From: Diadema antillarum
Lineage: Eukaryota
Direction of reading: 5' to 3'
Assembly (NCBI RefSeq): GCF_040938485.1
Contig: NW_027271135.1
Span: 62,001 to 126,000, forward strand
Length of the DNA: 64,000 nt
Shown: positions 3,483-44,052 of the stretch, piece by piece
How positions within the stretch are numbered: the first letter of the stretch is position 1
Layout of the letters: each line of letters opens with the position of its first letter
The notes under the pieces: model-generated
What the model saw: the letters and a program-made list of their open reading frames with translations, nothing else
The model's database searches: none
What the model was told of the DNA's origin: nothing
Program-made: the position numbers and the translations under genes

Positions 3483-4385
3483 ATGGCTGGAGTTTCTCCG
3501 TCGAGCCTCTGGCCTCGGCCGTTCTGGATACTCCTTGTTCTTGCATTTTCACCTGGACCTCTCGTTCAAGCTTCCAGGTTTTTGCTTCCCGCCACCTCCC
3601 TGGCCATCGCCAAGAGTCACTATATGGGACTAAGCACTATCACAAGAGAACTGGTACTACGAGGACATGAAGTCACTTTACTGCTCCTTGACAGGCGGGG
3701 AACGGCTGGCATGCTAGAAGGCTCTTACACCGACAACATCACTTACCCAAACTCGAAATCTGATGAGGAACTAGCCGCGGTATGGAGAGACATGACAGAT
3801 GCAATGGACAATTACTCAAGTTGGACCATATCGCAGACTGTCAAGAAGATTTCAAAATTATACGATAATCTGTACTTTGGTTGCTACGAGCTATTCCAGC
3901 ATGGGGAAACCTTGGGAAAGCTGGAGGCGAAAAAGTTCGATATGGTGCTGTCCTCTCCAGTGGCAGATGCTTGTGACACTGTGATCAGTGCTTATTTGGA
4001 TGTATCCTTAGCTGTAGTCACAGGATCCCGACGAAGTCCGTCTTTCAACGAAGACATCTTCGGCATACCCGTTCCAAGCTCGTACACCCCATACAGCCTC
4101 GCTCTTCAGCTCCCAGCCAACATGAATTTCTGGCAGCGGTTGGCAAATTTTGTGACAAGATACACCATTCATCCCGTGATTGAGTATTTCGCGATAACTC
4201 TGCCAGTCGGCAGGCTGCAGGAGATGTATGACATCAGAAGAGACCTTATTCCGAAGCAACTGCTTCAGAGGGCCGACCTCTGGTTGTGTCACACCACTTT
4301 TGCACTGGACTCTGCCCGACCCATTACGCCAAACTGGGTTCCTATAGCTGGATTTACCACCAAACCACTTAATCCTCTGCCACAG
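3483..4385 (+). CDS. UGT: UGT variable exon 1, copy A (signal peptide + aglycone-binding N-terminal domain, 301 codons)
   Basis: The ORF shows UGT N-domain motifs SHYM (catalytic His46), ELVLRGHEVT, KFDMVLS, PVPSSYTP, MNFWQRLANF and ARPITPNWVPIAG. It ends at phase-0 donor CAG|gtaccg (4385/4386). Confidence 0.93.
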
Positions 4386-6009
4386 GTACCGACATAAACT
4401 TCGCATTTTCCTATAGGTGTTCCGATCATGCCCCGAATCAAGGGTCGTTTTTTCCTATTAAAATTCCTATCTATTCACCATCACCAGGGTTACTCATTTC
4501 CCTTTTAGTGAAAATCGTTGGCTGTATGTATGATTATACATGAAATTAGGTTCATTTTTAGTTGTCAAAATTGACATCAGTGCAGCGCACCTCAACCATC
4601 CCCCAGTGACGCCACACAGGCATGAGTTCATGCACTGCTGATGACGGCTGTCCAGAACGTAACAGGTGCATTCCTTAGTCCAAAGAATGGACGGCCATTC
4701 ATGAAGTGAAAAAAAAAAAAATCTCTGACAGTTCTTCTGTCTTCTGCCTTAAACGAATGTAGAGAGCCATGCGTTCTCTCCGAAGCTGTTGAGACCATCC
4801 TGACTGCATGTTAGCGGCTGACGATCAGAGATAATCGTCTCCTTAGAGCACAAAACATATGAAAAGCCGTATAAAGATTCCAGTTTTTTTTTTATTCATC
4901 CCTTTCCAAGTAGGTCGTGACGAACAAATCTCTTTGTAAGGGTCTAGTCAGGTGCAGATAGAGGATGCTCGCGACATTCTGTAGCTGCGAACGATTTTCC
5001 TCAGTAGATTGACAGTTCTGTCAGCCGTCGCCTCTATGAGTTCGCAAATGCTGTGTGCTTTGACGAGAAAAGCGCACTGACCTCATCCGTGGAATGCCAT
5101 TTGAACAACATCTGCAGGGAATGAGAGCCCATAATTATGTTCACCATCTCCGCAATGGTGTATTCATAGAACAGAATGATGATAGGACATCTTCAATGGA
5201 TTCAGATACGAGTATGATGGGTTGACTTTGGTAATGTCTAGGCCCTTCTCGCCGTTGACTTTCCTCCACTACAACATGAGTTCCTATATAGTTTCTGCTC
5301 GGAATTCGCCATGATGACCGTATAGTTACATCGAAGATTATTAAATATACTTTCCCGACAGAAAACCCCACGATTACTATGTGTACAATAATGAAAGCAA
5401 GTTTGGCGGCATGATGCAACTTTGTCTTATATCATGTATATTGTACTTCCGTCCTCACCGACACATGCTTTATACTCCACTGTATCTGACCTGTTAGTCA
5501 CAATGCACGTTTTTTTTTTGATAAGTTCTACATAGTGGGAGGGGTGGGGCATCAATATCTAATGCTGATAGTTACTATATCGACCGTCGATGCATATGCT
5601 TGCCACGGTGAAAAGTCTTTGCCATTAGTCAACGAAGCACACATCAAGATCGGCGGTCTGCATTTCACTTATATTACTTTACCTGTACATCATTCTCCAA
5701 ACAAAGGTGGTTTTTCTTGACACCGAGTATAGATTCGTCTTCACAATCTCTTTGTAAGGAAAGTTCTTGGTAATTACCGTAAACTAAGCTCACCCTGCCT
5801 ACTTCTGCTCCATACAAGTCTCCCATCTGTATGCCGGAGATCCGAAAGTCTTTTTGTGCCCGTCGTATATAGCGAGACCTCCGGGATCTCAGCGGCACTA
5901 TAGATTCTCTGAACAAGAGGTGGGATAGCGTTATTCGTATCGCCTATAGGAGAGAGATGGCTTCGATAAAGACAGACAGTCCGTCATGGTCTTCTTGAGC
6001 CCTTCTCTA

Positions 6010-9894: not shown

Positions 9895-9997
9895 GGAAGT
9901 GAACTTTGAACTTATTGTTATGTGGAAACATTTTGTAGCATGCTGGATCTTCTGCACTGCCACTATCTTTCTAGTCTGCAACACAGTCAGAGCGAAG

Positions 9998-10900
9998 ATG
10001 GCTGGAGTTTCTCCGTCGAGTCTCTGGTTTCGGCCGTTCTTACTCGTTGTTTTTACATTCCTAGCACATGGACCTTTCATTCAAGCTGCCAGATTTTTGC
10101 TTCCCGCTACCTCCCTGGCCAGCACCAAGAGTCACTATATGGGACTAAGCACGATCACAAGAGAACTGGTACTACGAGGACATGAAGTCACTTTCCTGCT
10201 CCTTGACAGGCGGGGAACGGCTGGCATGCTAGAAGGCTCTTATACCGACCTCATCATCTACCCGAACTCGAAATCCGATGAGGAACTAGCCGCGATAAGG
10301 AGAGACATGACAGATACAATGGACAGTTACTCGAATTGGACCATTTCGCAGATTGTCAAGAAGATTTCGGAATTTTACGATAATCTTCACTTTGGTTGCT
10401 ACGAAGTTTTCCAGCATGAGGAAACCTTGCAAAAGCTAAAGATGAAAAAGTTTGATATGGTGCTCTCCTTTCCTGTGGTAGATGCTTGTGACGCTGTGAT
10501 CAGTGCTTACCTGGATGTATCCTTAGCTATAGTCACAGGAACCCGACGAAGTCCGACTTTCAACGAAGACGTCTTCGGCATACCCGTCCCAAGCTCGTAC
10601 ACCCCATACAGCTTCGCTCTTCAGCTCCCAGCCAACATGAACTTCCGGCAGCGGTTGGCCAATTTTGTAACACGATACACAATTCATCCCGTGATTGAGT
10701 ATTTCACTATAACTCTGCCAGTTGGCAGGCTGCAGGAGATGTATGACATCAGAAGAGACCTTAGTCCGAAGCAACTGCTTCAGAGGGCCGATCTCTGGTT
10801 GTGTCACACCACTTTTGCATTGGACTCTGCCCGACCCATTACACCAAACTGGGTTCCTATAGCGGGATATACCACCAAACCAGTTAAGCCTCTGCCACAG
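9998..10900 (+). CDS. UGT: UGT variable exon 1, copy B (301 codons)
   Basis: Same motifs and length as copy A, from MAGVSPSS to phase-0 donor CAG|gtatcg. Confidence 0.93.
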
Positions 10901-11260
10901 GTATCGAGATAAATTTCACATTTTCCTGTAGGTGTTCAGATCATGCCCCGAATCAAGGGTCATTTCTACATATAAAAATACTATCTATCCACCATCATCA
11001 CGGTTACTCATTTTCCTTGTATATGGTGGAAATCATTGGCTTTATGTATGATTATACATGAAATTAGGTTCATTTTCCGTTGTCAAAATTGACATCAGTG
11101 CAGCGCATCTCAACCATCCCCCAGTGGCGTCACACAGGCGTGAGTGCGTGCACTCTGACGGCTGGAATGCAACAGGTGCATTCCTTAGTCCAAAGAATGG
11201 GCGGCCATTCATGAAGTGAAAACAAAAAATCTCTGGCAGTTCTTCTGTCCTCTTCCTTAA

Positions 11261-29622: not shown

Positions 29623-32600
29623 TTATTGATGCTCAGATTCCTGAACATATCCTTGCAACCTTTTAGTATCATGGAAAAAGGGCGACACCATCGGGAAGTC
29701 AAAAGCATTCGACTTGAACGTGAGTGTAGAATTGTCTGTGTCGTCATCAGATAAACACAGGAAAGGACAGCTTTTCGAAATATAGTCCTTGATGGATACT
29801 GATGGATTGGTCACTCTGCAGTGACTGAAGGATATGCAGCAGTTGTCATTGGTCACTAAGCCTAATGGCTTTTGCCCATACGTCATGATGCAACAGTTAT
29901 GGAAGTGAAGACAAAGAACGACATTTCCCAAACACTTTCGAGCCCAGAAAAGCACGTAGCCAATGTTGATCGGATCTACAACATGAATGAATCGGAGAGA
30001 GAACACACGTGGAGTCCCATCGCTGTGTACAAGGATTGGCTCTTGGCTATCATTCTTGTCGCGACATTCTCTCAAAGTTTTGATGTCTTCGATCTCGACC
30101 TCGCTCAAATCGCCAAGTACAACTTTAGCGAGAGAGAGTATTTCCAAATTTGGAAACATCCGACTAGTCAGAGACAAGATGGTGGGGAGGGAAATAGAAT
30201 GACCTCGATCGATGTCAACGAACTCCAATCTGAACTCTGCGAGTGAATCATTTTGGACATCTTCCGGGATAGATACTTCCCTGTTGTAAGAGAGATTCTC
30301 ACACCAGTGTGACAAACCGACCCGCTGCAGACGTGGACATGCCATCCCTACATGGGCTAGAACATCAGCCAAAGAACAACGTTGTGGAGGGAAACTCGAA
30401 CCCGCGATGATGACTTGTTCGATCCCCAACTTGTCAGGAAGTGATGAGTAATGAGATGAACGAAATTCAGGGATCCGAATCGTCATGAAAAGAAGATGAA
30501 GTTTGATTGTGTTTGGGGTGTACCGAGCAATCAGAAAGAATATATCTACGATCGAAAATTCTTCCAATGCTATATTCGACTTTCTTTTGACCACGTCGAT
30601 GCTTGCATTACCAACCTTCCTTAAGCGTATTTCGTCTACGATGAGTTGGGCTTTCACGTCGTCTGCACTGGGAACTATCTCGGTGTGAGAAGGGATGTAA
30701 GCTTTTAACTCATCAAGTGATAGCAGTGTCAGATGACATTTGCCTAACGATTGACCTACAACATCCAACACACCTGTAACAGATATATCTTCCATCATGT
30801 TCTTAAGACGCAGCTCCTCGAGACATGACTTTACAACGCATTCCTTCCGAGAGGTATCATGGCGATCCTCGACGGTCAACACAATGTCGTGCAAGAAGCA
30901 TCTTTTCATGGCGGAGCAGAAACCACTCGCAACACCAAGAAGCTCAGAGAGTGACAACTGGTTATCAACAAAACCAATTTCCAAATCCTCAATTGCAGTT
31001 GACCCAACCCGAGGCATGAGATCTGGATTGTGCTCATGAAGAACTAGCTCAACATAGGAGACATGCAGACATCGCATGTTCTGACACTTTCTTGCAAACA
31101 GGTGCAGCAGATCGAAAAGAGACACTTGCGTGCTTATGCTGTTGATATGAAGTTTCTGAACACTGCATTGCTGTTCATTACTCTGCCTTACAGTTTTGCA
31201 TGACTCATGAAGGTCAAGTTCTGTGTAAGTGAGCGATATGGTAGCAACATCAATCTTCATCTGCGACAGTATGTTCATTAACCCTGAAAGATGAACAGAC
31301 TTTTGACATTTGTTGAGACTGAGTTCTTCAAGTTTGAATGTCTCTAGGGATGGTCCGGGTAAACCCTCCAGCGAGAAGTCTCCCGTGAAATCGGAAACGA
31401 AGATGCTTTTCAACTTTCGATAGCTCTTTGTCGTGAGTGAGAGAAGATCGGACAGAGAAATCGTTTCAATTATGTCGAACATTGACAGACTGGTGCATGG
31501 TTGAAAGCTAACATTGTTAGGTAATGCAAACTTCAGATAGTAAAGGAAGCTGTGACAAAGGCTGCCATCGTAGTCCTGGCGTTCTGGGTTGTGTCCATCC
31601 AGCTTCTCAATCATTGGAAGCAAGTCTGCCTCGGACCCACTCTCTTGATTGATCATGAGGCTCAGCAGAAATAGAGACCTCATAAAATCATGCGACTTTA
31701 CGACAAGCATTTCATCAAGGAATTCCGGCACTTGTTCGTCAATGCCACTCAGCTCACTATGTAGATCAGCTTCTGTCTTCTCATTATCTTGCAAAGACAC
31801 AAGGTGTTCAACTATCTTCCTAGATCTCACACGATTGTCGTAACTCCCTTCACGCGCCCTTCGTTGGCAGCTGAATACCAACGTGTACTGTAAAGATATT
31901 GTCTGGGCAGCGTTGGACATCCCTGCCAAGGTTGACTCCATGACTTCGGGGTGTGACGCGATGAAATCTCCGGCACATTTTTCTTGGAACAACAAGTGTG
32001 GAAAGGAGTAAACAACCTTGAGAGACTCAAATGCATCATGATGTATTTTGGCCTTTTGTCGAACAAGCAGTCCAATTTTCAAGCCAATTTCAATCATGCG
32101 TGTTTTGTGCCCAAATTCGTCTCTAGGGAAAATTAACTTCTTCCCGGGTTTCAAGACGCCCTCGAGCGCCATTTTCCCAAGATCATCCCAGAACTTTTCT
32201 AGCACAGGCATGTCCACCTCGTCTGGAATCTCATGATAGAGGGGTTTCCTAGATTCACCGATCTTGTCTATGTTATTGACAAAGAGGGCACGAAGAAACT
32301 TGGTGAACAGGGAATTCATCGTATCGGCTTCGGTCGTGTCTTCGGAGCATGTCTTTTTGAGATAGCATACCATGGAAAGAAGGATTGGCACACGCGCCAG
32401 GTGGCGAATAACCCCGCTATATTTTATCTTCTCCAGGCACTGTCTAGCCGCCCGATCATCAGGAGCAAAGTACTGTTTGACAAAAGAATCGACCCCCTCT
32501 GAGTCAAATCCGTCAAGACTTACCTGAGCGTACATGCATGTTTGCTTTTGAAGCAAACATGTGTGCCACGGGCGGGTCGTGACCAGAGTCGTAACTTCGG

Positions 32601-33205
32601 CCATCATTTTGCCTGCCAGAACATCATTAATGTCTCCTTTATAGCTATCTGGATCAAATTCATCGTAGCCATCGAGAATGAGCTTAACCTCTGTTGGATT
32701 CGACTGAATAAACCTCTGTATATGCGATCAGGAGTTATCGAACTGTCTTTGCATATAAGCTGGGTGTGTATGGCCTCGGCTACGTCCCCCGAACCCTGAA
32801 GTCTACGGAACTCAAGCGCACAAAGTATCTTAACGTCCTTCAGGGGAGACTGTGGCACCTTCTTTGCCCAGTCATAGGCAAGTTTCTTGCACAGGGTACT
32901 CTTACCGGTTCCACCCTCACCGAAAACCAGAATTCGATCTGCTATGCTGCCATCTATCCAAAGGTTGAAAAGGTCGTTGTGCGAATTTTTCAGCTTATCT
33001 TTTGTCTTCTTACGGGATCTCGTGTCGACTTCCTGTCGCAAAGAAAGAGAAATGAAGTATTCATTGAGGTCCACCAGCCTCTCGTCCCAGGGATCGGTAG
33101 TCACAGTGCAATAGATCTGTTTGTAGTACCTTCTCAGTTCCTTTGCAAATATTTCAGCAAACTGCTCGTCTTCTATATGTGCTCCCTTTGAATAATCCGT
33201 GTTTT
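29623..33205 (-). CDS. NLR terminal exon: NACHT + helical domains + atypical LRRs (3583 nt, frameshift at ~32713-32717; gene or pseudogene)
   Basis: Walker A RILVFGEGGTGKS is in ORF 32604-33215. Walker B KLILDGYDE, LVTTRP, VPILLSMVC, WHD FPHLLFQE and repeated SLxDLL...L..L.L units are in the frame of ORF 29623-32607. Acceptor tttacag| at 33206/33205 (phase 1). Confidence 0.88.
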
Positions 33206-33898
33206 CTGTAAACATAAAAAAATCAGAAAAGAAAGACGATATGATTTAGTTATTTCAATGTTGTTTACGTCAACTTCACTCTGTATTTTCTTATCCTGTT
33301 CCTCACTGATACGTGATAGAAGGTCAATCTTCAATATTGCATTTTATCCCTCAAGAATGTTTGGCAATAAAGGGATAATGATTAAGATTATATGATGGAC
33401 TCCTGTTATAACAAAGTCCTCGGAACCGGCAGTTTTCTTCCATTATATCGAAATTTCGTTAGAACCGTACAAATAAACAATAAGAATACATAGAGTGGAT
33501 AATGTGGCGGCATTAATTTTCACTTCGTTGTAACCAGAATTTTATCATAACCGTGTTCATTATGATGGGAGTGCACTGTAATTATAATGCAGTGTAACTT
33601 TTTATTTTCTATTATAGAAATCGAGATAAACTCAAGTGGCTAGCGTCTTGAGTGGAAACCAACAACGAAAAGAGAGATCTATCATAGTGATAGTATTACT
33701 ATCCAACAATTATTGTTACAACAGTGAGTACGACTTGTGATTATGGGTAAATTCATTTACGCCTACCTATAAATTTGTGGGGGGTGTTTTACGAGCTACA
33801 ATGTATGTTTCTAAAAAATGGTGTAATGTCTAGTTTTGTGAATCACTAACACTTACTCAGCTTAAAGAGTAAATGCGACAAACAAAAGACAATTATAC

Positions 33899-34195
33899 CT
33901 TTTCTTAAGCACTTATCGGCAGTTTGAACCATCCCGATTTGGTCCAGCTTAGATGCCAAAAGATGGCGTCTACCCTTTTCGCCGGGAGTCTTCTCTCTCC
34001 ACGTGAACAGCATGTGCGTCGTACCATCCACAGTTACGTTGTTGTGAAGAAAATTTGTCTTTTGGTATCTCTCGATTTCAGGATAACCAAAGCCAAGTAG
34101 GAGACCAAGATCAGGAACTTTGGATACATCGACACATTTGGCAATATCTCGCAGCTCAGTGTCAGATACATCGTCCGTACTAATACATCTTTGTT
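33899..34195 (-). CDS. NLR exon encoding a DEATH domain
   Basis: SDTELRDIAKCV...DLGLLLGF...EIERY...MLFTWRE...LASKLDQIG shows the death-fold helix pattern. The donor G|gtataa (phase 1) fits the next exon. The acceptor is ambiguous (34197 via CAG vs 34195 via GAG). Confidence 0.8.
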
Positions 34196-34533
34196 CTCTG
34201 AAACTTAAAAATACAACCAAGACAACACGATGAAAATCAGCATGAATTTGTGCAAAAGACTTCAATGAAAACTACAGCTTTACGAGTTTGTCATTTGCAT
34301 CATTGCAGTTATAATCGATATTTTGCCTGGCAGAAATCATTTGCATTCTCGAAAACACTCTTTCTAAGAGTGTAGGCTTACTTGTTCCATTGGCACAATC
34401 AACAAGCAATTAGGCACAATGACACTGAAGTACTGCCTATAGATAAATATCTACCATCACTTTAGGAATATCACCTGACATGTAAAGAAATTTGACTATG
34501 AAAGTGAAAATCACGCTAACTAATTATCCTTAC

Positions 34534-34983
34534 TCTGCGAGTTCTGTTTGGACGAGGTTAAAATTGATGCAGATAGTGACGTAGAGACCAATCCCTGCTC
34601 CCCTCTACGAGATGACGAATACTCCACGTTTCCCAACTCCTCAGACAGTGGCGTTTTGTCTTCTTTCCGTTGGAGCGTCCTCGCAGCACTAAGATCAGTT
34701 GGTAACTGAGGCAACTCATCTTGACTGATTTCTGCTGGTGGAGATGATATCGGGACATCGACCGGCTCTCTTGGAAGAGGTTCTTGCTCGGTGTGCTCTG
34801 ATGTTCGGGTAGATAACTCTCCTTCTGTACGGCTCTGATTCGCCGCCGGTGGTGCTTGCACCGAGGAAGTCTGTGGGGATGTCAGTGACTCACTTGCTGG
34901 TGATAGTGGGGGCGGAGAGGGCGCTCTTGCATGTACCATGACAAGACGGGCTCCAACTTGATCTTCTGTGTGCAGAAGAATGT
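34534..34983 (-). CDS. NLR exon encoding a Pro/Ser/Glu-rich disordered linker
   Basis: 150 open codons; ttacag| acceptor (phase 1) and A|gtaagg donor (phase 1). Confidence 0.7.
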
Positions 34984-35302
34984 CTGTAATAATACAATTC
35001 TGCTGTACATTTATGCTTTAAAAACTGTACAGCTTAAAGCGTGCCCCCAAACACTGACGAAGGAATCAAATTTTACATTTGTTTTTTGCATACTATAGTT
35101 TAGATTTATCGAAATTATGACAAAACTAGCATTTGTTTTTCTTTGGCCTTTTAGTTTGCGTGTTCGCTTGTTTGTTTGTTTTATGGTTTTTCCTTCTTTT
35201 CTTCAAATCATGAAAATACAGCTTAAGTATATGCGTTTTGTGTAGGAAGATTCTTACACACGCCATATTTTAAATCACTCTAGTCTTTCCCTCGATCATT
35301 AA

Positions 35303-35871
35303 AGGACAAGTTCAACTTCATAAACATAAGAATTGAGAGAATGCAACAATATTAGTAGAACACATCAGTGAAAGTTTGAGGAAAATTGGACAATCGATGC
35401 AAAAGTTATGAATTTTTAAAATTTTTGTGTTGGAACCGCTGGATGAGGAGACTACTACAGCTTGTGAGTCATATGCGTACAACAGTATAAAGAAAATGTA
35501 AAAGAAAATTCAACATATTTTCACTTTTTTCGCATAATAAAAGAGCACTTGACTTGCCTCTTTCTAAAGGCAGGGGGAATAATATTACCCATAACATTTG
35601 TCAGTAACCAGTCAGGGGAATGTGTACTTTTTTCAAAAGATGGAATTGTGTGAAATTCTCTTTATATTTTCCTTATATTGTTGTACGCATGTGACATCTA
35701 AGTTATTCATACACTGCAGTAGTCTTCTCATCCAGCGGTTACTGCACAAAAACTTCAAAAATTCATAACTTTTGAACGGATTGTCTGATTTTCCTCAAAC
35801 TTTCAATGATGTGTTCTACTAATATTGCTACATTCTCTCAATCCTTATGTTTATGAAGGTGAACTTGTCCT
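35303..35871. mobile_element. Kolobok-like MITE
   Basis: TTAA TSD on both sides (35299-35302, 35872-35875); TIR aggacaagttca...tgaacttgtcct extends into long imperfect inverted arms. Confidence 0.85.
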
Positions 35872-36109
35872 TTAAGGTGCACAGGTAATTAAAATCTTAC
35901 CTTCCTCTGGTTCAAAGCTTTATCTGCCTTGAATAGTGCCCTTCCTATAGCATCGCACATACATACTGCATTGCCCATTTTTAACATAACAGAGGTCTTC
36001 TAGAGACCATCTTATACATTCGATATAATTATACAGTATCTATCAAAAAAAAAAGAGAAAGAAATAAGGTAATCCATCGTTGGAGGGTTATTATTCATAA
36101 TTGTCAACT

Positions 36110-36985
36110 CTACACGGAGAGCACAATGTTGGTTGTGAGGAGAGAGGAGCTCTTTTTCTCTTCATTGATATCTAATTATGTCGATTTAATGTCATAAACA
36201 TGAGTGAGCACATGAACTTTAAAGACAATGACAAATTGCACTTTTTTTCAAAATTTGAGTGTCACATGAAGAAAAATGAGGGAACGATGAATATCTCAAT
36301 GAATAGATGAGATTATAACTTTTAACATGTCCACCTGTCTGATGACCTGGTCACTTCCACAAAAGCCAACCCACACAATCCTTTTTTCTGTTTGTTTTTC
36401 AACACATAGCTTGCAGCGTCAAACCATGTCTTTTTACGAAGAGAGAAAAATAAAGTTACCGACAACGTGGCCGTGTTGAAAGTTATGGACCACAAAAGGT
36501 TAGAAGAAACCCTAAACACACACCTGCAGTCGTGCAGGCTGACCTGTTAATTTTACCACTTTCATTAACAGACCTCATCCATTCAGTGAGACATTCATTC
36601 CGCTTGAAAGATTCATCTGATTGGAATGTCAACTGGATAGACGTTCATTTTGTCCCAATCAGTTGCAATTTACCTGTTTGATGAGACTTTGGCTATTTGT
36701 AGCGATCGATGTGAAGAAGCTTACAGATCCAGTAGGTGAAATCTTATCAAACAGATAAATCGCAACTGATTGTGACCAAAAAAAAGAATGAACTTCTATC
36801 CAGTGAAACATTCATTGTTGCTTCACGATGACACTCAAACTTGGTAAAACGTACAATTTGTCATTTTTGTCTTGTTTGAAGTTCATGAGCTCAGTCATGC
36901 CTGACATTTGTCAATCTGATTAGGTATCAATGGAAAGAGGAAGAGTTCTTCTTTCCTCCCAACCAACATTGCGCTCTCCATACAA
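36110..36985. mobile_element. Foldback-like element with long imperfect TIRs and an inner inverted pair
   Basis: ggagagcacaatgttggttg (~36115) pairs with caaccaacattgcgctctcc (~36960-36980). An inner inverted repeat pairs ~36632-36690 with ~36740-36805. Confidence 0.6.
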
Positions 36986-37586
36986 TACCATAGCTGAAAA
37001 TCATGAAATAGTAACCCTCTTAATTTGGATTACCTTTTTTTATACGCACTGTAGATTCTTACAAAAATAGCACATTCGTAGATGTGACAACAAATTAGTC
37101 GTTTGGTAAGTCATTTGGGACGCATTTTTTTTTTCAGAATAAGAAAATTTATAAACACAATCATACACTGTAGATGATGTTCTGTCTGATGACAAAGTAA
37201 AATTCACGCAATCATATTGTTTTACTCCCTTCGATGCACAGGTTTACATAGAGATTATATAAATTTTCATTCAAGCTTCAAGCTCTATACCTCGAGGCTA
37301 AATCTGCGGTATAGACATATGAGGTTGATTTACAAACATTTTGTTTGACTTGATTTATGGACTTTGCCTTTGGTTATCACATTTGCCTGTGTGCATTTTC
37401 ATATTCACTTCATGATAATCAATGTGATCAAAGAGTCGAGTCAATCTTTGTTCACACACCATTTGTACTGCGTATACGTGTATGTGTGGGGAGCACTATA
37501 CAGCACAAGCTAGGAACAATGTAAAAAAAAAATACATTTTCATGCAAACACTGCAGGCAATGGCAGGGGACGTAGTTTTAATCCCG

Positions 37587-37947
37587 CAGAGCTACCAAGT
37601 CTCACGCATTCTGCGTGAGACTCAAGCATTTAGGGGCCATCTCACGATCTCACGCATGGCACCCATTCCTCTCACGCATCGGGCCAAGTCTGCCACTTGG
37701 GCCCATAATAATGAGCATAGCTCAAAAGATTGAAGTGATAGTTGCAAATGAAGGTATATTTCCCTTTTGTCTCCCCAAATACACCTGATCGCACCATTAA
37801 GAGCTAAAAATTGAAAAAGCTCTGTACAGTGGGAGGCCACAGGGGGAAAAACCCCTCCCACACCCTCGCTCGCGCGCATAATCGCATGCCGAGATGCCGA
37901 GTCATGAAAATCTCACTCATAAATTTTTTTTGAACTTGGCATCCCTG
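37587..37947 (-). mobile_element. hAT-like non-autonomous element with 6-bp TSD
   Basis: cagagctaccaag...cttggcatccctg flanked by atcccg/atcccg; same family as 48662-50780. Confidence 0.75.
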
Positions 37948-38054
37948 ATCCCGTCCAATTTCAAGTAAAATAGTTGAGCTGTCTTTTACGACCACCAGGT
38001 CGAAATCTATCTATAAAAGTTGCTTCCATATAGGGTCTACACTCACAGTCCAAC

Positions 38055-38083
38055 CAGGGAGGTGGAAGTGTTCCACCTCCCTG
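38055..38083. mobile_element. 29-bp TIR-only element with 7-bp TSD
   Basis: gtccaac|cagggaggtggaa-gtg-ttccacctccctg|gtccaac. Confidence 0.65.
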
Positions 38084-38907
38084 GTCCAACAGTATAAAGG
38101 CGGTTGTACAAGTCACTGTTCAGCAGAATTTCACTTATTAAGTCTGCATAAATCTCAAGTTTGAAGTACGTTAAATGTTTATATAAACTCCTCAAAATAA
38201 GTTCTGCAATAAAGTTTGATATATCATATTTCTCTTATACCTGCATTATCTTCATTAAACATGACGTCATAAGAAAGCCTGATTGATTATCTTTGAATGA
38301 CATCTCACTTGCCGTGATTGGGTGTTCTTGGAATATGCAAAATAGTTGAGTATGGGGACAGATCAAAGGTGAAAAGTCGCAACAATTCTGCTATTTATAA
38401 CGTACAGTTTTGACGAAAAAGGCCACAGGAATAAGGAAAGCTGAAATGAACTTTCAAAAACTCCTATTTCCTTGAAATAAGATGACTTTTTGGTCAACCT
38501 TTATGTTTAATTTCAATCTGCAGATACTACTGCAGTTTTTAATTCCTGGATGAAGCCTGGAATCTAATGATAATTTCACAATGCATTCTTTTCAAGCACA
38601 TTCCTTCCGTGCAACGACAAAGCAAATGGGAACTCTACACTGTTTGACATAATACAGTATGTTTGCTCTATTTCGCAACATTTCACACTTGACCTCTCCT
38701 CATACTCAGTCATACTGTGCATTCCAGGAATGCATAATGTAAACAAGCGAGTTGTCGTTGTAAAGAAAATAAATCAGGTTTTCATATAATGTCACATTTG
38801 AATAAAATGATGTAGTTTTAAGAGAAATATGATACATCAAATTGAACTTGGAGAACTTTTTTTGAGGAGTTTGTAATCTTATGCATGAGGATATAGTAAT
38901 TTATATG

Positions 38908-38910
<3 letters not shown>

Positions 38911-38958
<48 letters not shown>
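38911..38958. repeat. (AT)n microsatellite
   Basis: Direct reading. Confidence 0.9.
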
Positions 38959-39003
38959 TGCTTTCTAATTAATTTCAAGATATTTAAAAATGTTGATTTT
39001 TAC

Positions 39004-39247
39004 CCTGTGGCGCTCCAGTGTGAATTGTTAGTACATTGGTGTCTGTGAAGTCCTCAAACACTGCTGCTGTGATTGGCTGATCGTTGTAGGTGATAAGACT
39101 TGACTCATGGCCATAGAGAGTCTTGCATTCAGTCAACAGCTGGTCCAGGGAAGCCGCTTCCACCTCTCCAAGTCTTCTCCTGTCTTTGCCATCGTCTTGT
39201 AGAATGATAAACGACTTCACGGGGCCTTCTGCAATCGTTTGTCGCTT
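39004..39247 (-). CDS. Putative NLR exon 2: beta-grasp-like (CIDE-N/PB1-like) domain
   Basis: tattcag| acceptor (phase 0), G|gtaaaa donor (phase 1). It encodes KSFIILQDDGKDRRRLGEVEAASLDQLLTECKTLYGHESSLITYNDQPITAAVFEDFTDTNVLTIH. The phases link 40146 to 39247 and 39004 to 34983. Confidence 0.65.
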
Positions 39248-39608
39248 CTGAATACATGAAATAGTGGTCGATTTGAATGAATGAATGAATGAATTTGTTT
39301 TAAGTGACCGCTGAGGAAGAAGTGGATGGTATAAAATAAAAGCAAGCAGCCACGGCTTGCCCCTCCCAGCCCACCTTTTTTTTTTTTTTTGTGGGGGGGG
39401 GGGGGGAGGCATAATAACCACTTTGGGCCCCCGCTTTTAAACCCCGGAAGTGTCTCTAGAAGAATGTTTTGTTGTTTTTGCGTTCAAGCCGATTAACCCC
39501 CGAAAACGTACCTTGCAGAAAACTGCCGCTGAAGGCGTTTCTGTGTCAGCTGATGAAACGCGGAAGTGGCATCAGTATTGTAACTGCCCACCCCCCCCCC
39601 CAAAAAAA

Positions 39609-39641
<33 letters not shown>

Positions 39642-40145
39642 CTTTTAAAAACGCGGCGCCGGCATTTAGGACAATGGGGGAAGGGGTAGGTAATAAGTGT
39701 CTTGCTTATATAGGGGCAATCGCTATAGCCAGCTAGGAAAATCGAACCATGGCATATCTTGACTGATAGTCTGCGTGCTTTCATCCACTGAGTCACAACA
39801 GTTTCTCAAAACACAACGATAGCATAATATAGGACCTATCATACCCTGACAGTAGTTAAATCAAGGGAAATCACTTTCAAAGTTTTGCGGAAATTGCTTT
39901 GATTATTCTGTACCATTGAATAATTAGATGATAACTACACATTAGTTACAATGTCCTATTGAGCTGCACTGATTACGAATATCATAAACACAAACTCACA
40001 CCATGGTGAATCACATTCATAAAATCTTGTGAATGAATTATGCATCTCTGTGCGCATAAATAGGCCCACATAGTATTAAGCACCAAAATGAATGTATGAA
40101 TGATGAGAAATTACATAAAGTAGACCCAGTTTCATTAAAACTTAC

Positions 40146-40307
40146 GAAACGCCTGGATCTTGAAAAGGAAAGAGACCTCCTCAGCCGAGAGAGCCTCCCT
40201 CTTCCAGCCGAGGTTTGGCCGGCAATGAGGTCTGTCTGCTCCGCTTGTTGCTCCCCTCCTGGAACATGAGGCGACGATTTCTGGCTTCGAGAAAATCTGT
40301 TTCCCAT
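40146..40307 (-). CDS. Putative NLR first coding exon: MGNRFS myristoylation motif + polybasic segment
   Basis: ATG in good context (gagATGg); 54 codons to |gtaagt (phase 0); contains RGRLSRLRRSLSFSRSRRF. Confidence 0.65.
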
Positions 40308-42777: not shown

Positions 42778-44052
42778 TATCTCTCAAATCGTAAGCAATT
42801 AACAAATATTAATGGTGTCCCATCTAAACTTAAAGAAATAAAATGTGGAGTACCACAAGGGTCTATTCTTGGGCCTCTTCTTTTTTTATTGTATATAAAT
42901 GATTTGCCGTATTCAACATATGATGTAGATTATATATTATTTGCAGATGATGACACAAGTGTATTCTGTAAAGGCACAGACCCAAAGACATTATTTTATA
43001 ATATGAATGTTCAACTTGATTGTATAAGAAATTGGTTGTCGGTAAACAAATTGATTTTGAATGTTGATAAGACCAATTATATATTATTTGGAACAAGAAC
43101 TAAAATTGACAGTAATTTGAAATTGATGTATAGAGATGAGGAAATTAAACGAATATAATTATGACATAAAATTTTTGGGTGTTTTTATTGATGATAAATT
43201 GTCCTGGAATTCTCACGTGAATCATATATGTTCAACAATATCGAAAAGTATTGGTGTTCTGTATAAATTACAATTTCTTCCACAGAATATTTTAAAGATG
43301 CTGTATTATTCGTTTGTTTCAGTTCATATAAAATATTGTAGTATTGTTTGGGGTTTTACTACAAAGAAAAATATTGATCGTATTCATAAATTACAGAAAC
43401 GCAGTATTCGTTTGATAACCAACTCTTCATATTTAGCTCCCAGTAAGCCATTATTTCTTAAGATGAAAACTTTACCTGTTCAAGAATTTATTTCTTTGGA
43501 AAGTATGATTTTTATGTTTAAAGTTTCCAACAATGTTCTTTCTGAAGTATTTCACAACCATTTCACTTTGCATTGTTCTATACACAATTATAATACCAGG
43601 AATGCAAAAAAAAAAAAAATATTCACACACCATTAAACCGGATTTCAAAAACTCAATCCTCCATTTTTTACCATGGCCCTATTCTTTGGAATACTCTTCC
43701 TCCAACAGTCAAGAGTAGTAAGACCTTATGTCAATTTAAAAGGCTTTATAAAAAATATATTTTTGATGAAATGTATCTGAAACTGCAAGTATAAGTATGC
43801 ATTGTTTCCACCTCTGCCTCTTTTCTTCTCTTTTCATTGTATCTCTGACCTTTGTTTTATTAATTGAATTTGTATGATAATTGTTTAGTTGAAATGTATT
43901 GATAATTGTTTGTAGGGGATCATTTCCAACAAGCCTCGTGTGTGCTTTCTATGATCCCTCCATTCAAAATGTATAAATGTACCAAGGCAATTGTGTTTTG
44001 ATATTTGTAGATGTTATGTTTTGATATGGAAATAAATGAATGAATGAATGAA
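42778..44052 (+). mobile_element. 5'-truncated LINE (CR1/L2-clade) reverse-transcriptase fragment, frameshifted
   Basis: YLSNRKQ...CGVPQGSILGPLLFLLYINDL...LFADD...LILNVDKT...FLGVFIDDKLSW...LQKRSIRLI; ends in aataaa(tgaa)n. Confidence 0.9.

What the first reader, a model, noticed from the sequence alone, without database searches (positions are those of the whole stretch)
29623..40307. NLR with an unusual architecture: myristoyl/polybasic anchor - beta-grasp (CIDE-N/PB1-like) - disordered linker - DEATH - NACHT - atypical LRR
Seen: five minus-strand exons (40307-40146, 39247-39004, 34983-34534, 34195-33899, 33205-29623) whose phases chain 0,1,1,1 into ~1577 aa once the frameshift is corrected. 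Exon 1 starts MGNRFS and has an Arg-rich patch. Exon 2 resembles CIDE-N by eye (F.I...D...R....V.A.SL..L...), without the EDGT signature. Established: MGxxxS plus a basic cluster is a membrane-targeting signal, DEATH-NACHT-LRR is the typical sea-urchin NLR layout, and some plant NLRs use N-terminal acylation and integrated domains. Inference: a membrane-anchored animal NLR with an extra interaction or decoy module, possibly linked to cell-death nuclease (DFF/CIDE) or PB1 signalling.
Basis: partly seen in the sequence, partly recalled or inferred. Interest (0 to 1): 0.8.

Follow-up and report, generated by a model that had tools for sequence, protein, structure and literature searches.

The report
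Broken sea-urchin NLR with CIDE-like head
This is a Diadema antillarum immune-sensor (NLR) gene whose predicted extra front end carries a lipid-anchor motif and a small domain shaped like the CIDE domains of cell-death nucleases, but this copy is broken by two frameshifts and the joining of the front exons has not been seen in RNA.

Summary
The five minus-strand exons exist, with conserved GT/AG sites and compatible phases. The window is D. antillarum GCA_040938485.1, contig JBFRCO010000247.1.

What the parts are:
- Exon 5 encodes a NACHT module (nearest solved relative NLRC4, E 4.8e-10). It is followed by a roughly 57-residue super-repeat that Pfam misses but that AlphaFold/Foldseek place among LRR solenoids.
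- Exon 4 is a Death domain (PIDD, E 6e-5).
- Exon 2 has no sequence relatives outside Diadema among 1.84 billion proteins. Its model is a beta-grasp, and its five best matches among 48,161 PDB chains are all CIDE domains (Z 8.6-7.3, against 7.2 or less for ubiquitin-likes).
- Exon 1 keeps the MGNRFS start and the Arg/Ser-rich patch under purifying selection.

- The locus carries two frameshifts, not one. A 2-nt insertion lies in the NACHT.
- NCBI annotates this copy as a 335-aa truncated product.
- The sister contig and D. setosum hold intact ORFs of 1545 and 1549 codons under the same exon model.
- The Lytechinus orthologues lack exons 1-2.

NCBI gene models join exons 1-2 to the NLR at three Diadema loci, but I found no RNA evidence. 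Verdict: a new N-terminal variant of a known receptor kind. It is plausible, computational only, and likely a null allele in this window.

The parts
40146..40307 (-). Exon 1 (54 codons). It holds the ATG at 40307 in a good Kozak context, the MGNRFSR N-myristoylation-type start (40287-40307), a variable stretch (codons 13-30) and an Arg/Ser-rich patch (codons 31-54, 40146-40217).
   Evidence: ORF and GTAAGT donor. The ATG context and donor are identical in L001 and L002. Codons 1-12 plus 31-54 show 5 synonymous changes and 1 conservative change. Codons 13-30 show 9 nonsynonymous and 1 synonymous change. Fisher p = 7.5e-5. No indels, against 9.6-14.3 indel events per kb in the introns.
39004..39247 (-). 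Exon 2 (81 codons plus 1 nt; phase 0 in, phase 1 out). It encodes the predicted beta-grasp, CIDE-like domain, whose core is residues 10-77, about 39017-39220.
   Evidence: AF2 model: pLDDT 79.7, pTM 0.64, strand-strand-helix-strand-helix-strand by DSSP (a short bridge after strand 3). Top matches are CIDE domains. No sequence relatives outside Diadema. Splice sites conserved and no indels.
34534..34896 (-). Exon 3 conserved core (phase 1-1), a Pro/Ser/Glu-rich linker with no Pfam match and presumably disordered. Alternative in-frame acceptors lie at 34965 (NCBI model of this locus) and 34983 (reader). An in-frame ATG at 34939 could be an alternative start.
   Evidence: Alignment of the three Diadema loci. 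P0013 sequence. No Pfam hit. One 160-nt contig from a run labelled 'metagenomic RNA-Seq' ends exactly at the donor, 34534.
33899..34203 (-). Exon 4 (phase 1-1), the Death domain (about 33909-34154). Orthologous acceptors give an exon start at 34203 (AAG|) or 34197 (CAG|).
   Evidence: Pfam Death E 1.2e-3, 19.3 bits, below the gathering score of 22.6. A profile of five orthologous segments hits the PIDD death domain in the PDB at E 6.4e-5 and 1.1e-4. The Lytechinus orthologue aligns through 33906.
34178..34184 (-). Lesion 1. A 4-nt deletion in a GGAC tandem repeat, relative to both the sister contig and D. setosum, frameshifts the Death exon when the orthologous acceptor is used.
   Evidence: Three-way alignment. 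Translation gives a stop after 54 codons. NCBI's 335-aa product P0013 ends in this shifted frame.
29623..33205 (-). Exon 5. It holds the NACHT (about 32464-32936; Walker A GEGGTGKS, Walker B LILDGYDE, and a TTRP motif I take for sensor 1), helical domains, and an LRR solenoid of about nine super-repeats of roughly 57 residues (about 29626-31491). The stop codon is at 29623-29625.
   Evidence: Pfam NACHT hits on both halves and 67.7-75.3 bits in intact orthologues. NLRC4, NLRP and NOD2 hits in the PDB. Repeat periodicity 55-61 residues. AF2 pLDDT 73.5, pTM 0.75. 64 matches at E <= 1e-3; all of the 50 best shown are LRR-containing proteins. dN/dS 0.15 for the NACHT and helical domains and 0.26-0.32 for the C-terminus.
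32722..32727 (-). Lesion 2. A 2-nt insertion (CGCATATA against CGTATA) between Walker A and Walker B frameshifts the NACHT.
   Evidence: It is absent from the sister contig and from D. setosum.

Best explanation
The locus is one copy of a Diadema antillarum NLR gene, either one haplotype or a very recent duplicate. Its core, a disordered N-terminus followed by Death, NACHT and LRR in three coding exons, is orthologous to Lytechinus LOC121407553.

In Diadema two further 5' exons are predicted to be spliced on. Exon 1 gives a Met-Gly-x-x-x-Ser start of the N-myristoylation type and an invariant Arg/Ser-rich patch. Exon 2 gives an 81-residue beta-grasp domain whose predicted shape is closest to CIDE domains.

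Inferred mechanism:
- The LRR solenoid keeps the NACHT ATPase off until a ligand or a perturbation is sensed.
- NACHT oligomerisation then clusters the Death domain and the CIDE-like domain.
- These recruit partners by homotypic polymerisation: Death-fold assembly, and head-to-tail assembly through complementary charges as in CIDE filaments.
- The myristoyl group plus the basic patch would hold the receptor at a membrane. The RRxS sites might work as a phospho-switch.

Shown here: gene structure, domain identities at the sequence or predicted-fold level, conservation, and the two lesions. Inferred: splicing of exons 1-2 to exon 3, myristoylation, CIDE homology and every downstream step.

The copy in this window carries two frameshifts that both sister sequences lack. 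It is most likely a young null allele or pseudogene copy. The window lineage shows no relaxed constraint, so the lesions are recent.
For: - Identity of the locus: the reverse complement of L004 is exactly window 24034-50307.
- Orthologues and domains.
- Intact ORFs of 1545 and 1549 codons under the same five-exon model in the sister contig and in D. setosum.
- All splice sites conserved, and no indels in exons 1-2 against 9.6-14.3 per kb in introns.
- Coding signature in exon 1.
- NCBI models P0001, P0002 and P0013 all join exons 1-2 to exon 3. The D. antillarum assembly (P0001, P0013) was annotated by NCBI's EGAP pipeline, described as integrating RNA-seq.
- Beta-grasp model. The five best of 48,161 PDB representatives are all CIDE domains, and the two best ESM Atlas clusters are CIDE-3 and DFF40.
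- Language-model neighbours are nearly all beta-grasp or ubiquitin-like families, CIDE-N and PB1 among them.
- LRR solenoid.
- Lesions. Window-lineage changes are 26 synonymous to 22 nonsynonymous, so constraint is not relaxed.
- CIDE assembly mode is taken from PMC7156525.
Against: - No RNA read or contig spanning the exon 1-2 or exon 2-3 joints was found.
- The Lytechinus orthologues start at the equivalent of exon 3, and no exon-1/2 homologue lies within 10 kb upstream.
- An in-frame ATG at 34939 is conserved and could start a Lytechinus-like product.
- dN/dS of exons 1+2 as a whole is 0.5-0.8 on few changes, not clearly below 1.
- The CIDE assignment rests on a model built from three near-identical sequences. 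Two of the five models were confident and three scored 47.6-56.9.
- The Z margin over ubiquitin-likes is only about 1.
- There is no sequence-level signal: Pfam, PDB phmmer and PDB hmmsearch are all blank.
- The assembly is about 11x HiFi and largely duplicated, so consensus indel errors cannot be excluded.
Confidence: 0.6

Rival explanations
1. Exons 1-2 are not part of the NLR message. The NLR starts at the conserved in-frame ATG at 34939, as the Lytechinus orthologues start with the equivalent exon. Exons 1-2 would then be a separate small gene, an alternative or rare 5' leader, or a remnant. The join would be a product of frame-compatible ab initio prediction.
For: - Lytechinus has three coding exons equal to Diadema exons 3-5 and no upstream homologue.
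- The ATG at 34939 is conserved in frame with a good Kozak context.
- No RNA support was found for the joint. The one RNA-labelled contig covers exon 3 only.
- The gene models differ in exon-3 and exon-4 borders between loci, which suggests weak transcript support.
Against: - Exon 2 ends in phase 1 at a conserved GT.
- Read-through stops after 6 codons, and the sequence just past the donor carries a 1-nt indel between species, so it behaves as intron.
- Exons 1-2 are free of indels, and exon 1 shows a coding signature.
- Read laying depth shows most of the 4-kb intron 2 is high-copy DNA; I did not screen it for further exons.
- Exon 3 has a conserved phase-1 acceptor, and the joined frame is open in all three loci.
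- Three NCBI models make the join.
Confidence: 0.25
2. The two frameshifts are consensus errors of a low-coverage, haplotype-duplicated HiFi assembly, and the window's gene is really intact.
For: - Both indels lie in short tandem-repeat contexts.
- The assembly is about 11x in total and spans roughly 2.5 times the haploid size, so each copy has low coverage.
- About 1030 codons downstream of the NACHT shift remain open.
- The window lineage shows no relaxed constraint.
Against: - HiFi errors are mostly homopolymer length errors, not 4-nt or 2-nt unit changes (general knowledge).
- Two independent frame-breaking indels fall in one gene, while the other exonic indels are all multiples of 3 nt.
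- Earlier notes on this genome, which I did not check, report other broken NLR copies.
Confidence: 0.3
3. The exon-2 domain is a generic ubiquitin-like or PB1-type beta-grasp, or a lineage-specific invention that converged on that fold. It would have no evolutionary or functional link to CIDE domains.
For: - No sequence similarity to CIDE-N by Pfam, phmmer or hmmsearch.
- The EDGT signature is absent.
- Foldseek E-values are all above 1e-3.
- The Z gap to ubiquitin-likes is about 1, and the tool treats that as near-tied.
- No homologue exists outside Diadema.
Against: - CIDE domains take the five top ranks of an exhaustive comparison with 48,161 chains.
- They also give the highest TM-scores in PDB Foldseek and in the ESM Atlas.
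- A basic cluster (K11, K21, R23-25) sits on the strand 1-2 hairpin, and an acidic cluster (D56, E65, D66) sits around helix 2. These residues are invariant in the three sequences. This is the charge layout that defines CIDE assembly (PMC7156525).
Confidence: 0.35

Closest known systems
Sea-urchin Death-NACHT-LRR NLRs (expanded echinoderm NLR family; orthologues Lytechinus variegatus LOC121407553 and L. pictus LOC135157763)
   Same: They share the Death domain, the NACHT with intact Walker A and B motifs, helical domains and a C-terminal repeat region. They are orthologous at 42-43% identity over the NACHT-to-C-terminus part (68-69% of the query), and the last three coding exons are laid out the same way. 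The Death-NACHT-LRR layout is the one described for sea urchin (PMC2858798).
   Different: Two extra predicted 5' exons encode a myristoylation-type start and a CIDE-like beta-grasp. The Lytechinus proteins lack them, and so does the 10 kb upstream of the L. variegatus gene. The LRRs are too divergent for the Pfam LRR models.
CIDE / CIDE-N domains (DFF40/CAD, DFF45/ICAD, CIDE-A/B/C, Drosophila DREP1-4)
   Same: The predicted alpha/beta-roll has about the same length. CIDE domains are the best structural matches: DREP3 Z 8.6, rmsd 2.1 over 67 residues; CIDE-A Z 8.4; TM 0.68-0.69 to the CIDE-3 and DFF40 Atlas clusters. A basic hairpin and an acidic patch around helix 2 are visible in the sequence.
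   Different: There is no detectable sequence homology (11-17% identity in structural alignments), the EDGT motif is replaced by YNDQP, and Pfam PF02017 gives no hit. In the paper library only three papers hold both terms, and neither of the two I opened (one only for its CIDE-N passages) describes a CIDE domain fused to a NACHT protein.
N-acylated plant NLRs and palmitoylated NOD1/NOD2/NLRP3 (from my own knowledge, not checked here)
   Same: The idea of lipid-mediated membrane tethering of an intracellular NLR.
   Different: These are different kingdoms and different lipidation chemistry. Here there is only a sequence motif and no biochemical evidence. A text search for myristoylation with NACHT in invertebrates found nothing relevant.
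Echinoderm membrane-linked NACHT receptors (Ig-TM-NACHT-LRR family noted elsewhere in this genome; sea-cucumber Ig-NACHT 'NLRC4', PMC8699970)
   Same: Echinoderm NLR cores attached to membranes by a lineage-specific N-terminal module.
   Different: Those use a signal peptide, Ig domains and a transmembrane helix. This one would use a lipid anchor and stay wholly cytosolic.

Membership tests
NLR (NACHT + LRR receptors) | NACHT NTPase domain with Walker A and Walker B motifs | tested here: met
   Pfam PF05729 matches both halves in the window (28.2 and 31.3 bits, gathering score 26.7). The intact orthologues score 67.7-75.3 bits. GEGGTGKS and LILDGYDE are present. In this copy a 2-nt insertion interrupts the domain.
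NLR (NACHT + LRR receptors) | NBD-HD1-WHD module related to solved NLRs | tested here: met
   phmmer of P0001:330-900 against the PDB gives NLRC4 at E 4.8e-10 (query residues 89-416), followed by NLRP14, NLRP2, NLRP7, NLRP6, NLRP3, entry 5irm (listed as 'uncharacterized protein'; NOD2 by my recollection) and NAIP.
NLR (NACHT + LRR receptors) | C-terminal leucine-rich repeats detectable by sequence models | tested here: not met
   No Pfam LRR family matched, at E <= 1 in the window's exon-5 pieces or at E <= 0.1 in six orthologous proteins.
NLR (NACHT + LRR receptors) | C-terminal LRR solenoid fold | tested here: met
   The AF2 model of the last 635 residues has pLDDT 73.5 and pTM 0.75, with repeating strand-helix units. 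Foldseek against the PDB gives 64 matches at E <= 1e-3; all of the 50 best shown are LRR-containing proteins: COI1 6.5e-8, TIR1, TLRs, NLRC4 9.3e-5, NLRP3, FBXL2. The 55-61-residue super-repeat fits paired 28/29-residue units of the ribonuclease-inhibitor type; that last point is inference.
Death domain (PF00531) | Match to the Death-domain sequence profile | tested here: inconclusive
   Pfam gives E 1.2e-3 and 19.3 bits, below the gathering score of 22.6. A profile of five orthologous segments hits the PIDD death domain (9tuf, 2of5) at E 6.4e-5 and 1.1e-4. No structure was predicted for this exon.
CIDE-N / CIDE domain (PF02017) | Match to the family's sequence profile, including the EDGT signature | tested here: not met
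No Pfam hit at E <= 1. No CIDE chain appears in PDB phmmer or hmmsearch at E <= 10.
CIDE-N / CIDE domain (PF02017) | Alpha/beta-roll (beta-grasp) with five strands and two helices | tested here: met
   This rests on a predicted model only. CIDE domains rank 1-5 of 48,161 PDB representatives, with Z 8.6-7.3. CIDE domains also give the highest TM-scores in PDB Foldseek (0.58-0.64) and in the ESM Atlas (0.68-0.69). The margin over ubiquitin-likes is about 1 Z unit.
CIDE-N / CIDE domain (PF02017) | Opposed basic and acidic surfaces that allow head-to-tail polymerisation | tested here: inconclusive
   The sequence shows an invariant basic cluster (K11, K21, R23-25) on the first hairpin and an acidic cluster (D56, E65, D66) near helix 2. 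The defining feature is taken from PMC7156525.
PB1 domain | Beta-grasp closest to PB1 structures | tested here: not met
   PB1 chains (MEKK3, MAP2K5, p62, p40/p67phox) score Z 6.9-6.1, below all five CIDE chains and many ubiquitin-likes. No Pfam PB1 hit.
N-myristoylated proteins | Met-Gly start with a small or uncharged residue at position 3, Ser/Thr at position 6, and no Pro at position 7 | tested here: met
   MGNRFSR fits the pattern I recall as PROSITE PS00008, G-{EDRKHPFYW}-x(2)-[STAGCN]-{P}. The first 12 residues are invariant in the three Diadema loci, with a synonymous change at codon 4.
N-myristoylated proteins | Actual co-translational myristoylation and membrane association | not testable with these tools
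   This needs NMT assays, click-myristate labelling and localisation of a G2A mutant.

The most novel reading that the evidence does not exclude
Diadema has built an NLR that couples sensing directly to CIDE-type filament assembly at a membrane. On activation, the clustered CIDE-like domains would seed or capture DFF40/DFF45-type CIDE proteins. This would link an innate immune sensor to the apoptotic nuclease system, or to another CIDE-dependent effector, without a caspase step. The myristoyl and basic leader would set where this happens.
Probability: 0.1. Interest if true: 0.75.

Novelty: new variant of a known kind. Interest (0 to 1): 0.4.

Why it matters
Invertebrate NLR families are known to shuffle N-terminal effector domains, but the domains described so far are almost all Death-fold (PMC2858798).

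A CIDE-like beta-grasp placed ahead of the Death domain would be a second, mechanistically different polymerising module on an NLR. An N-terminal lipid anchor would be a route to the membrane not yet described for animal NLRs. Together they would give a testable link between pathogen sensing and the CIDE/DFF machinery, in a keystone reef species that has suffered mass die-offs.

The practical result here is more sober:
- This copy is broken.
- NCBI's models of the gene are all truncated (335, 1191 and 1071 aa), while an ORF of about 1545 codons is conserved and under selection.
- The key splice join still needs cDNA.

Tried and rejected
- RNA evidence. Two run searches (exons 1-3 with their introns, and exon 5) listed no RNA holder. 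The single read-laying run showed that runs X4-X6 are genomic DNA of a related Diadema genome, 2-7% different, with contigs running across exon-intron borders. The small 'metagenomic RNA-Seq' run gave one 160-nt contig on exon 3. No joints at the predicted introns were seen.
- Sequence relatives of exon 2. All of these were blank or spurious: Pfam, PDB phmmer and hmmsearch, a word search of long proteins with region 1-135, and the exhaustive HMMER search of 1.84 billion representatives. The last found only the Diadema cluster and a junk tandem-repeat translation, P0012.
- A profile-profile test against a CIDE-N alignment was not run. No tool gave me CIDE sequences, and I did not type any from memory.
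- I searched 10 kb upstream of the L. variegatus orthologue for exon-1/2 homologues. The best E-values were 0.15-0.7, in low-complexity matches.
- dN/dS of exons 1+2 as a test of coding was underpowered (0.5-0.8). I replaced it with indel counts and the within-exon pattern.
- A surface-charge test of the model could not be done, because the coordinates are not exposed to scripts.
- PB1 was considered and ranked below CIDE and the ubiquitin-likes.
- I first thought the window might come from a third Diadema species, because it is only 95% identical to P0001. That was rejected when L004 proved to be exactly contained in the window.

Full report
WHAT IS THERE. Between 29623 and 40307 on the minus strand lie five open segments whose borders are canonical AG..GT and whose phases chain 0,1,1,1. 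Pfam finds the two halves of a NACHT domain in exon 5, separated by a frameshift near 32721-32727. It finds a weak Death match in exon 4 (E 1.2e-3, below the gathering score). It finds nothing in exons 1-3 and no LRR.

WHERE IT COMES FROM. The best protein relatives are NCBI 'uncharacterized proteins':
- Diadema antillarum P0001, 1191 aa, 95% identity.
- D. setosum P0002, 1071 aa, 94% identity.
- Lytechinus variegatus and L. pictus P0003 and P0004, 1540 and 1559 aa, 42-43% identity.

A last word search found P0013, a 335-aa D. antillarum protein. The reverse complement of its locus L004 is exactly window 24034-50307. So the window is GCA_040938485.1, contig JBFRCO010000247.1. P0001 is encoded on another contig of the same assembly, JBFRCO010000224.1. 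That contig is colinear with the window at 92-95% identity, through introns, flanks and the downstream UDP-glycosyltransferase gene.

The assembly preprint (10.64898/2026.05.24.727502) describes a hifiasm assembly of about 11x HiFi data. It spans 1.73 Gb against a haploid estimate of 0.70 Gb, with 84% duplicated BUSCOs, and it was annotated by NCBI's EGAP pipeline, described as integrating RNA-seq. The two contigs are therefore most simply two haplotypes, or a very recent duplicate.

THE GENE MODEL, TESTED BY COMPARISON. I aligned the window with the sister contig (L001) and the D. setosum locus (L002). The ATG context, all four donors, all acceptors and the stop codon are conserved. Under one five-exon model, both other loci give uninterrupted ORFs of 1545 and 1549 codons, from MGNRFS to the same stop.

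The window alone breaks this frame twice:
- A 4-nt deletion in a GGAC repeat at about 34181, at the start of the Death exon.
- A 2-nt insertion (CGCATATA against CGTATA) at about 32724, between Walker A and Walker B.

Its exon-4 acceptor (34195) is an AG 2 nt downstream of the orthologous CAG|, and this choice happens to restore the frame. With the orthologous acceptors the Death exon is frameshifted and stops after 54 codons, and NCBI's P0013 ends in exactly that shifted frame.

Two other borders need comment:
The acceptor conserved in all three loci gives an exon start at 34896, and NCBI uses 34965 here. All three are in frame.
The 25 codons it retains are nearly invariant and align with the last helices of the Lytechinus Death domain.

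NCBI's P0001 and P0002 also stop at ..RLRK|L. Yet the ORF runs on for 329 codons in all three loci under purifying selection (dN/dS 0.24-0.31 against D. setosum) and aligns with the Lytechinus C-terminus.

ARE EXONS 1-2 REAL, AND DO THEY BELONG? Several lines support them as coding exons of this gene.
- They have no indels in either comparison, while the introns show 9.6 and 14.3 indel events per kb.
- Within exon 1, codons 1-12 (MGNRFSRSQKSS) and 31-54 (the Arg/Ser patch) carry five synonymous changes and one conservative change. Codons 13-30 carry nine replacements and one synonymous change. Fisher p = 7.5e-5. This is a clear coding signature in this frame.
- Exon 2 ends in phase 1 at a conserved GT. 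Read-through stops after six codons, and a 1-nt indel between species follows the donor.
- The nearest conserved phase-1 acceptor is exon 3, and the joined frame is open in three loci.
- NCBI models at three loci make the same join.

Against this, no RNA evidence could be obtained. No RNA run was listed. The laid runs were DNA of a related genome, plus one small run labelled RNA whose only relevant contig covers exon 3 and ends exactly at its donor. The Lytechinus orthologue has three coding exons, equal to Diadema exons 3-5, and no exon-1/2 homologue within 10 kb upstream. A conserved in-frame ATG at 34939 could start a Lytechinus-like product. I put the join at about 0.7.

All internal introns are phase 1. 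Exons 3 and 4 are therefore symmetric cassettes, and skipping either one would keep the frame. That is the arrangement expected of domains added by exon shuffling.

WHAT THE PARTS ARE.
- NACHT and helical domains. The intact orthologues score 67.7-75.3 bits on PF05729. They hit NLRC4 (E 4.8e-10), several NLRPs, entry 5irm (listed as 'uncharacterized protein'; NOD2 by my recollection) and NAIP in the PDB. dN/dS is 0.15.
- Death domain. A profile of five orthologous segments hits the PIDD death domain at E 6.4e-5.
- C-terminus. Nine or so super-repeats of 55-61 residues. The AF2 model has pLDDT 73.5 and pTM 0.75 and shows strand-helix repeats. It gives 64 Foldseek matches at E <= 1e-3; all of the 50 best shown are LRR-containing proteins (COI1 6.5e-8, TIR1, TLRs, NLRC4, NLRP3, FBXL2). 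'Atypical LRR' is therefore supported by predicted fold, not by sequence models.
- Exon 2. It has no relatives outside Diadema, neither in a word search nor in an exhaustive HMMER scan of 1.84 billion proteins, and no Pfam or PDB sequence hit. The AF2 model from three near-identical sequences has pLDDT 79.7 and pTM 0.64, with strand-strand-helix-strand-helix-strand by DSSP and a short bridge after strand 3.

The fold searches on the exon-2 model agree with each other:
- The Foldseek list is almost wholly ubiquitin-like beta-grasp domains, at E >= 4e-3, and the highest TM-scores belong to CIDE domains (0.58-0.64).
- Among 48,161 PDB representatives the five best are all CIDE domains: DREP3 Z 8.6, CIDE-A 8.4, FSP27 7.4, DREP4 7.3, CAD/ICAD 7.3. 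Ubiquitin-likes start at 7.2 and PB1 domains at 6.9.
- The two best ESM Atlas clusters are CIDE-3 and DFF40 (TM 0.69 and 0.68, against 0.57-0.64 for ubiquitin-likes).
- Language-model neighbours are nearly all beta-grasp or ubiquitin-like families, CIDE-N and PB1 among them.

The charge layout that defines CIDE assembly is a basic face opposite an acidic face (PMC7156525). It is at least visible in the sequence as invariant K11, K21 and R23-25 against D56, E65 and D66. So a beta-grasp is likely, and CIDE-like is the best-supported subtype. Homology is unproven, and the family's sequence signature is not met.

HOW IT PROBABLY WORKS (inference). As in other NLRs, the LRR solenoid would hold the NACHT off. 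Activation would drive oligomerisation and cluster the N-terminal modules. The Death domain would then recruit Death-fold adaptors. The CIDE-like domain would offer a second polymerising surface, for self-assembly or for capture of CIDE proteins such as DFF40 and DFF45. The MGNRFS start fits the N-myristoylation consensus. Together with the invariant Arg/Ser patch it suggests membrane tethering, and possibly a phospho-regulated electrostatic switch. None of this has been tested.

STATE OF THIS COPY. There are two frame-breaking indels, both private to the window. The other exonic indels are multiples of three. No stop codon interrupts the roughly 1030 codons after the NACHT shift. The window-lineage ratio of 26 synonymous to 22 nonsynonymous changes is no higher than in the sister lineages. 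So the lesions are either very recent, giving a null allele or a young pseudogene copy (about 0.7), or consensus errors of a low-coverage duplicated assembly (about 0.3).

COMPARISON AND NOVELTY. Death-NACHT-LRR is the standard sea-urchin layout (PMC2858798). In the paper library only three papers hold both CIDE-N and NACHT, and neither of the two I opened (one only for its CIDE-N passages) describes a fusion of the two. A search on myristoylation, NACHT and invertebrates gave nothing relevant. I file this as a new N-terminal variant of a known receptor kind, seen so far only in Diadema and resting on gene prediction and predicted structure.

Earlier notes of this scan on the same genome describe Ig-TM-NACHT-LRR receptors and other broken NLR copies. 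They fit the picture of modular, fast-turning-over NLRs in this species. I did not check them, apart from the species identity.

Noticed in passing
window 3483-4397, 9899-10912, 19104-20126 (+): Three tandem, roughly 90%-similar ORFs of 304-340 aa. They look like alternative first exons of a UDP-glycosyltransferase gene. NCBI calls a 542-aa UDPGT product at this position, on both this contig and the sister contig.
   Followed up: no
window 35130-35929, 36130-37129, 37530-38929 (intron 2): Very high-copy repeats. Summed contig depth reaches the thousands to millions in three DNA runs of a related Diadema genome, with many internal rearrangement joints. Intron 2 is mostly repeat DNA.
   Followed up: no
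window 43136-43636 and 50038-50559 (+): ORFs that by eye resemble pieces of a non-LTR retrotransposon reverse transcriptase, upstream of the NLR gene. No family scan was run on them.
   Followed up: no
window 33899-34896 compared with 29623-33205; L001, L002: Mosaic relatedness. In exons 3-4 the window is closer to D. setosum (97.2-98.3%) than to the sister contig of its own species (91.9-94.6%). In exon 5b and intron 2 the opposite holds. This suggests old allelic lineages, trans-species polymorphism or gene conversion.
   Followed up: partly
window 29626-30612; L001, L002: NCBI models P0001 and P0002 splice out at ..RLRK (30613) and end one residue later. Yet 329 further codons stay open in all three loci under purifying selection and match the Lytechinus C-terminus. 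P0002 also skips 31303-30963. Either the models under-call the LRR, or there is real splicing inside the LRR exon.
   Followed up: partly
window introns at 39003/34897, 34533/34198, 33898/33206: All three internal introns are phase 1, so the linker exon and the Death exon are symmetric 1-1 cassettes. Skipping either would keep the frame.
   Followed up: no
window 34534-34690: A 160-nt contig from a small 'echinoderm metagenome' run labelled RNA-Seq lies on exon 3 and ends exactly at the predicted donor, 34534. This is the only hint of transcription found. The depth is 2, and the run may contain DNA.
   Followed up: partly
L003 1-8549 and 24980-26013: The genes called next to the L. variegatus orthologue are an 814-aa product with no Pfam hit on record and a WD40 beta-propeller protein. 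In Diadema the called neighbours are an SF1/KH gene and a UDPGT gene. The called neighbours therefore differ between the two genera.
   Followed up: no
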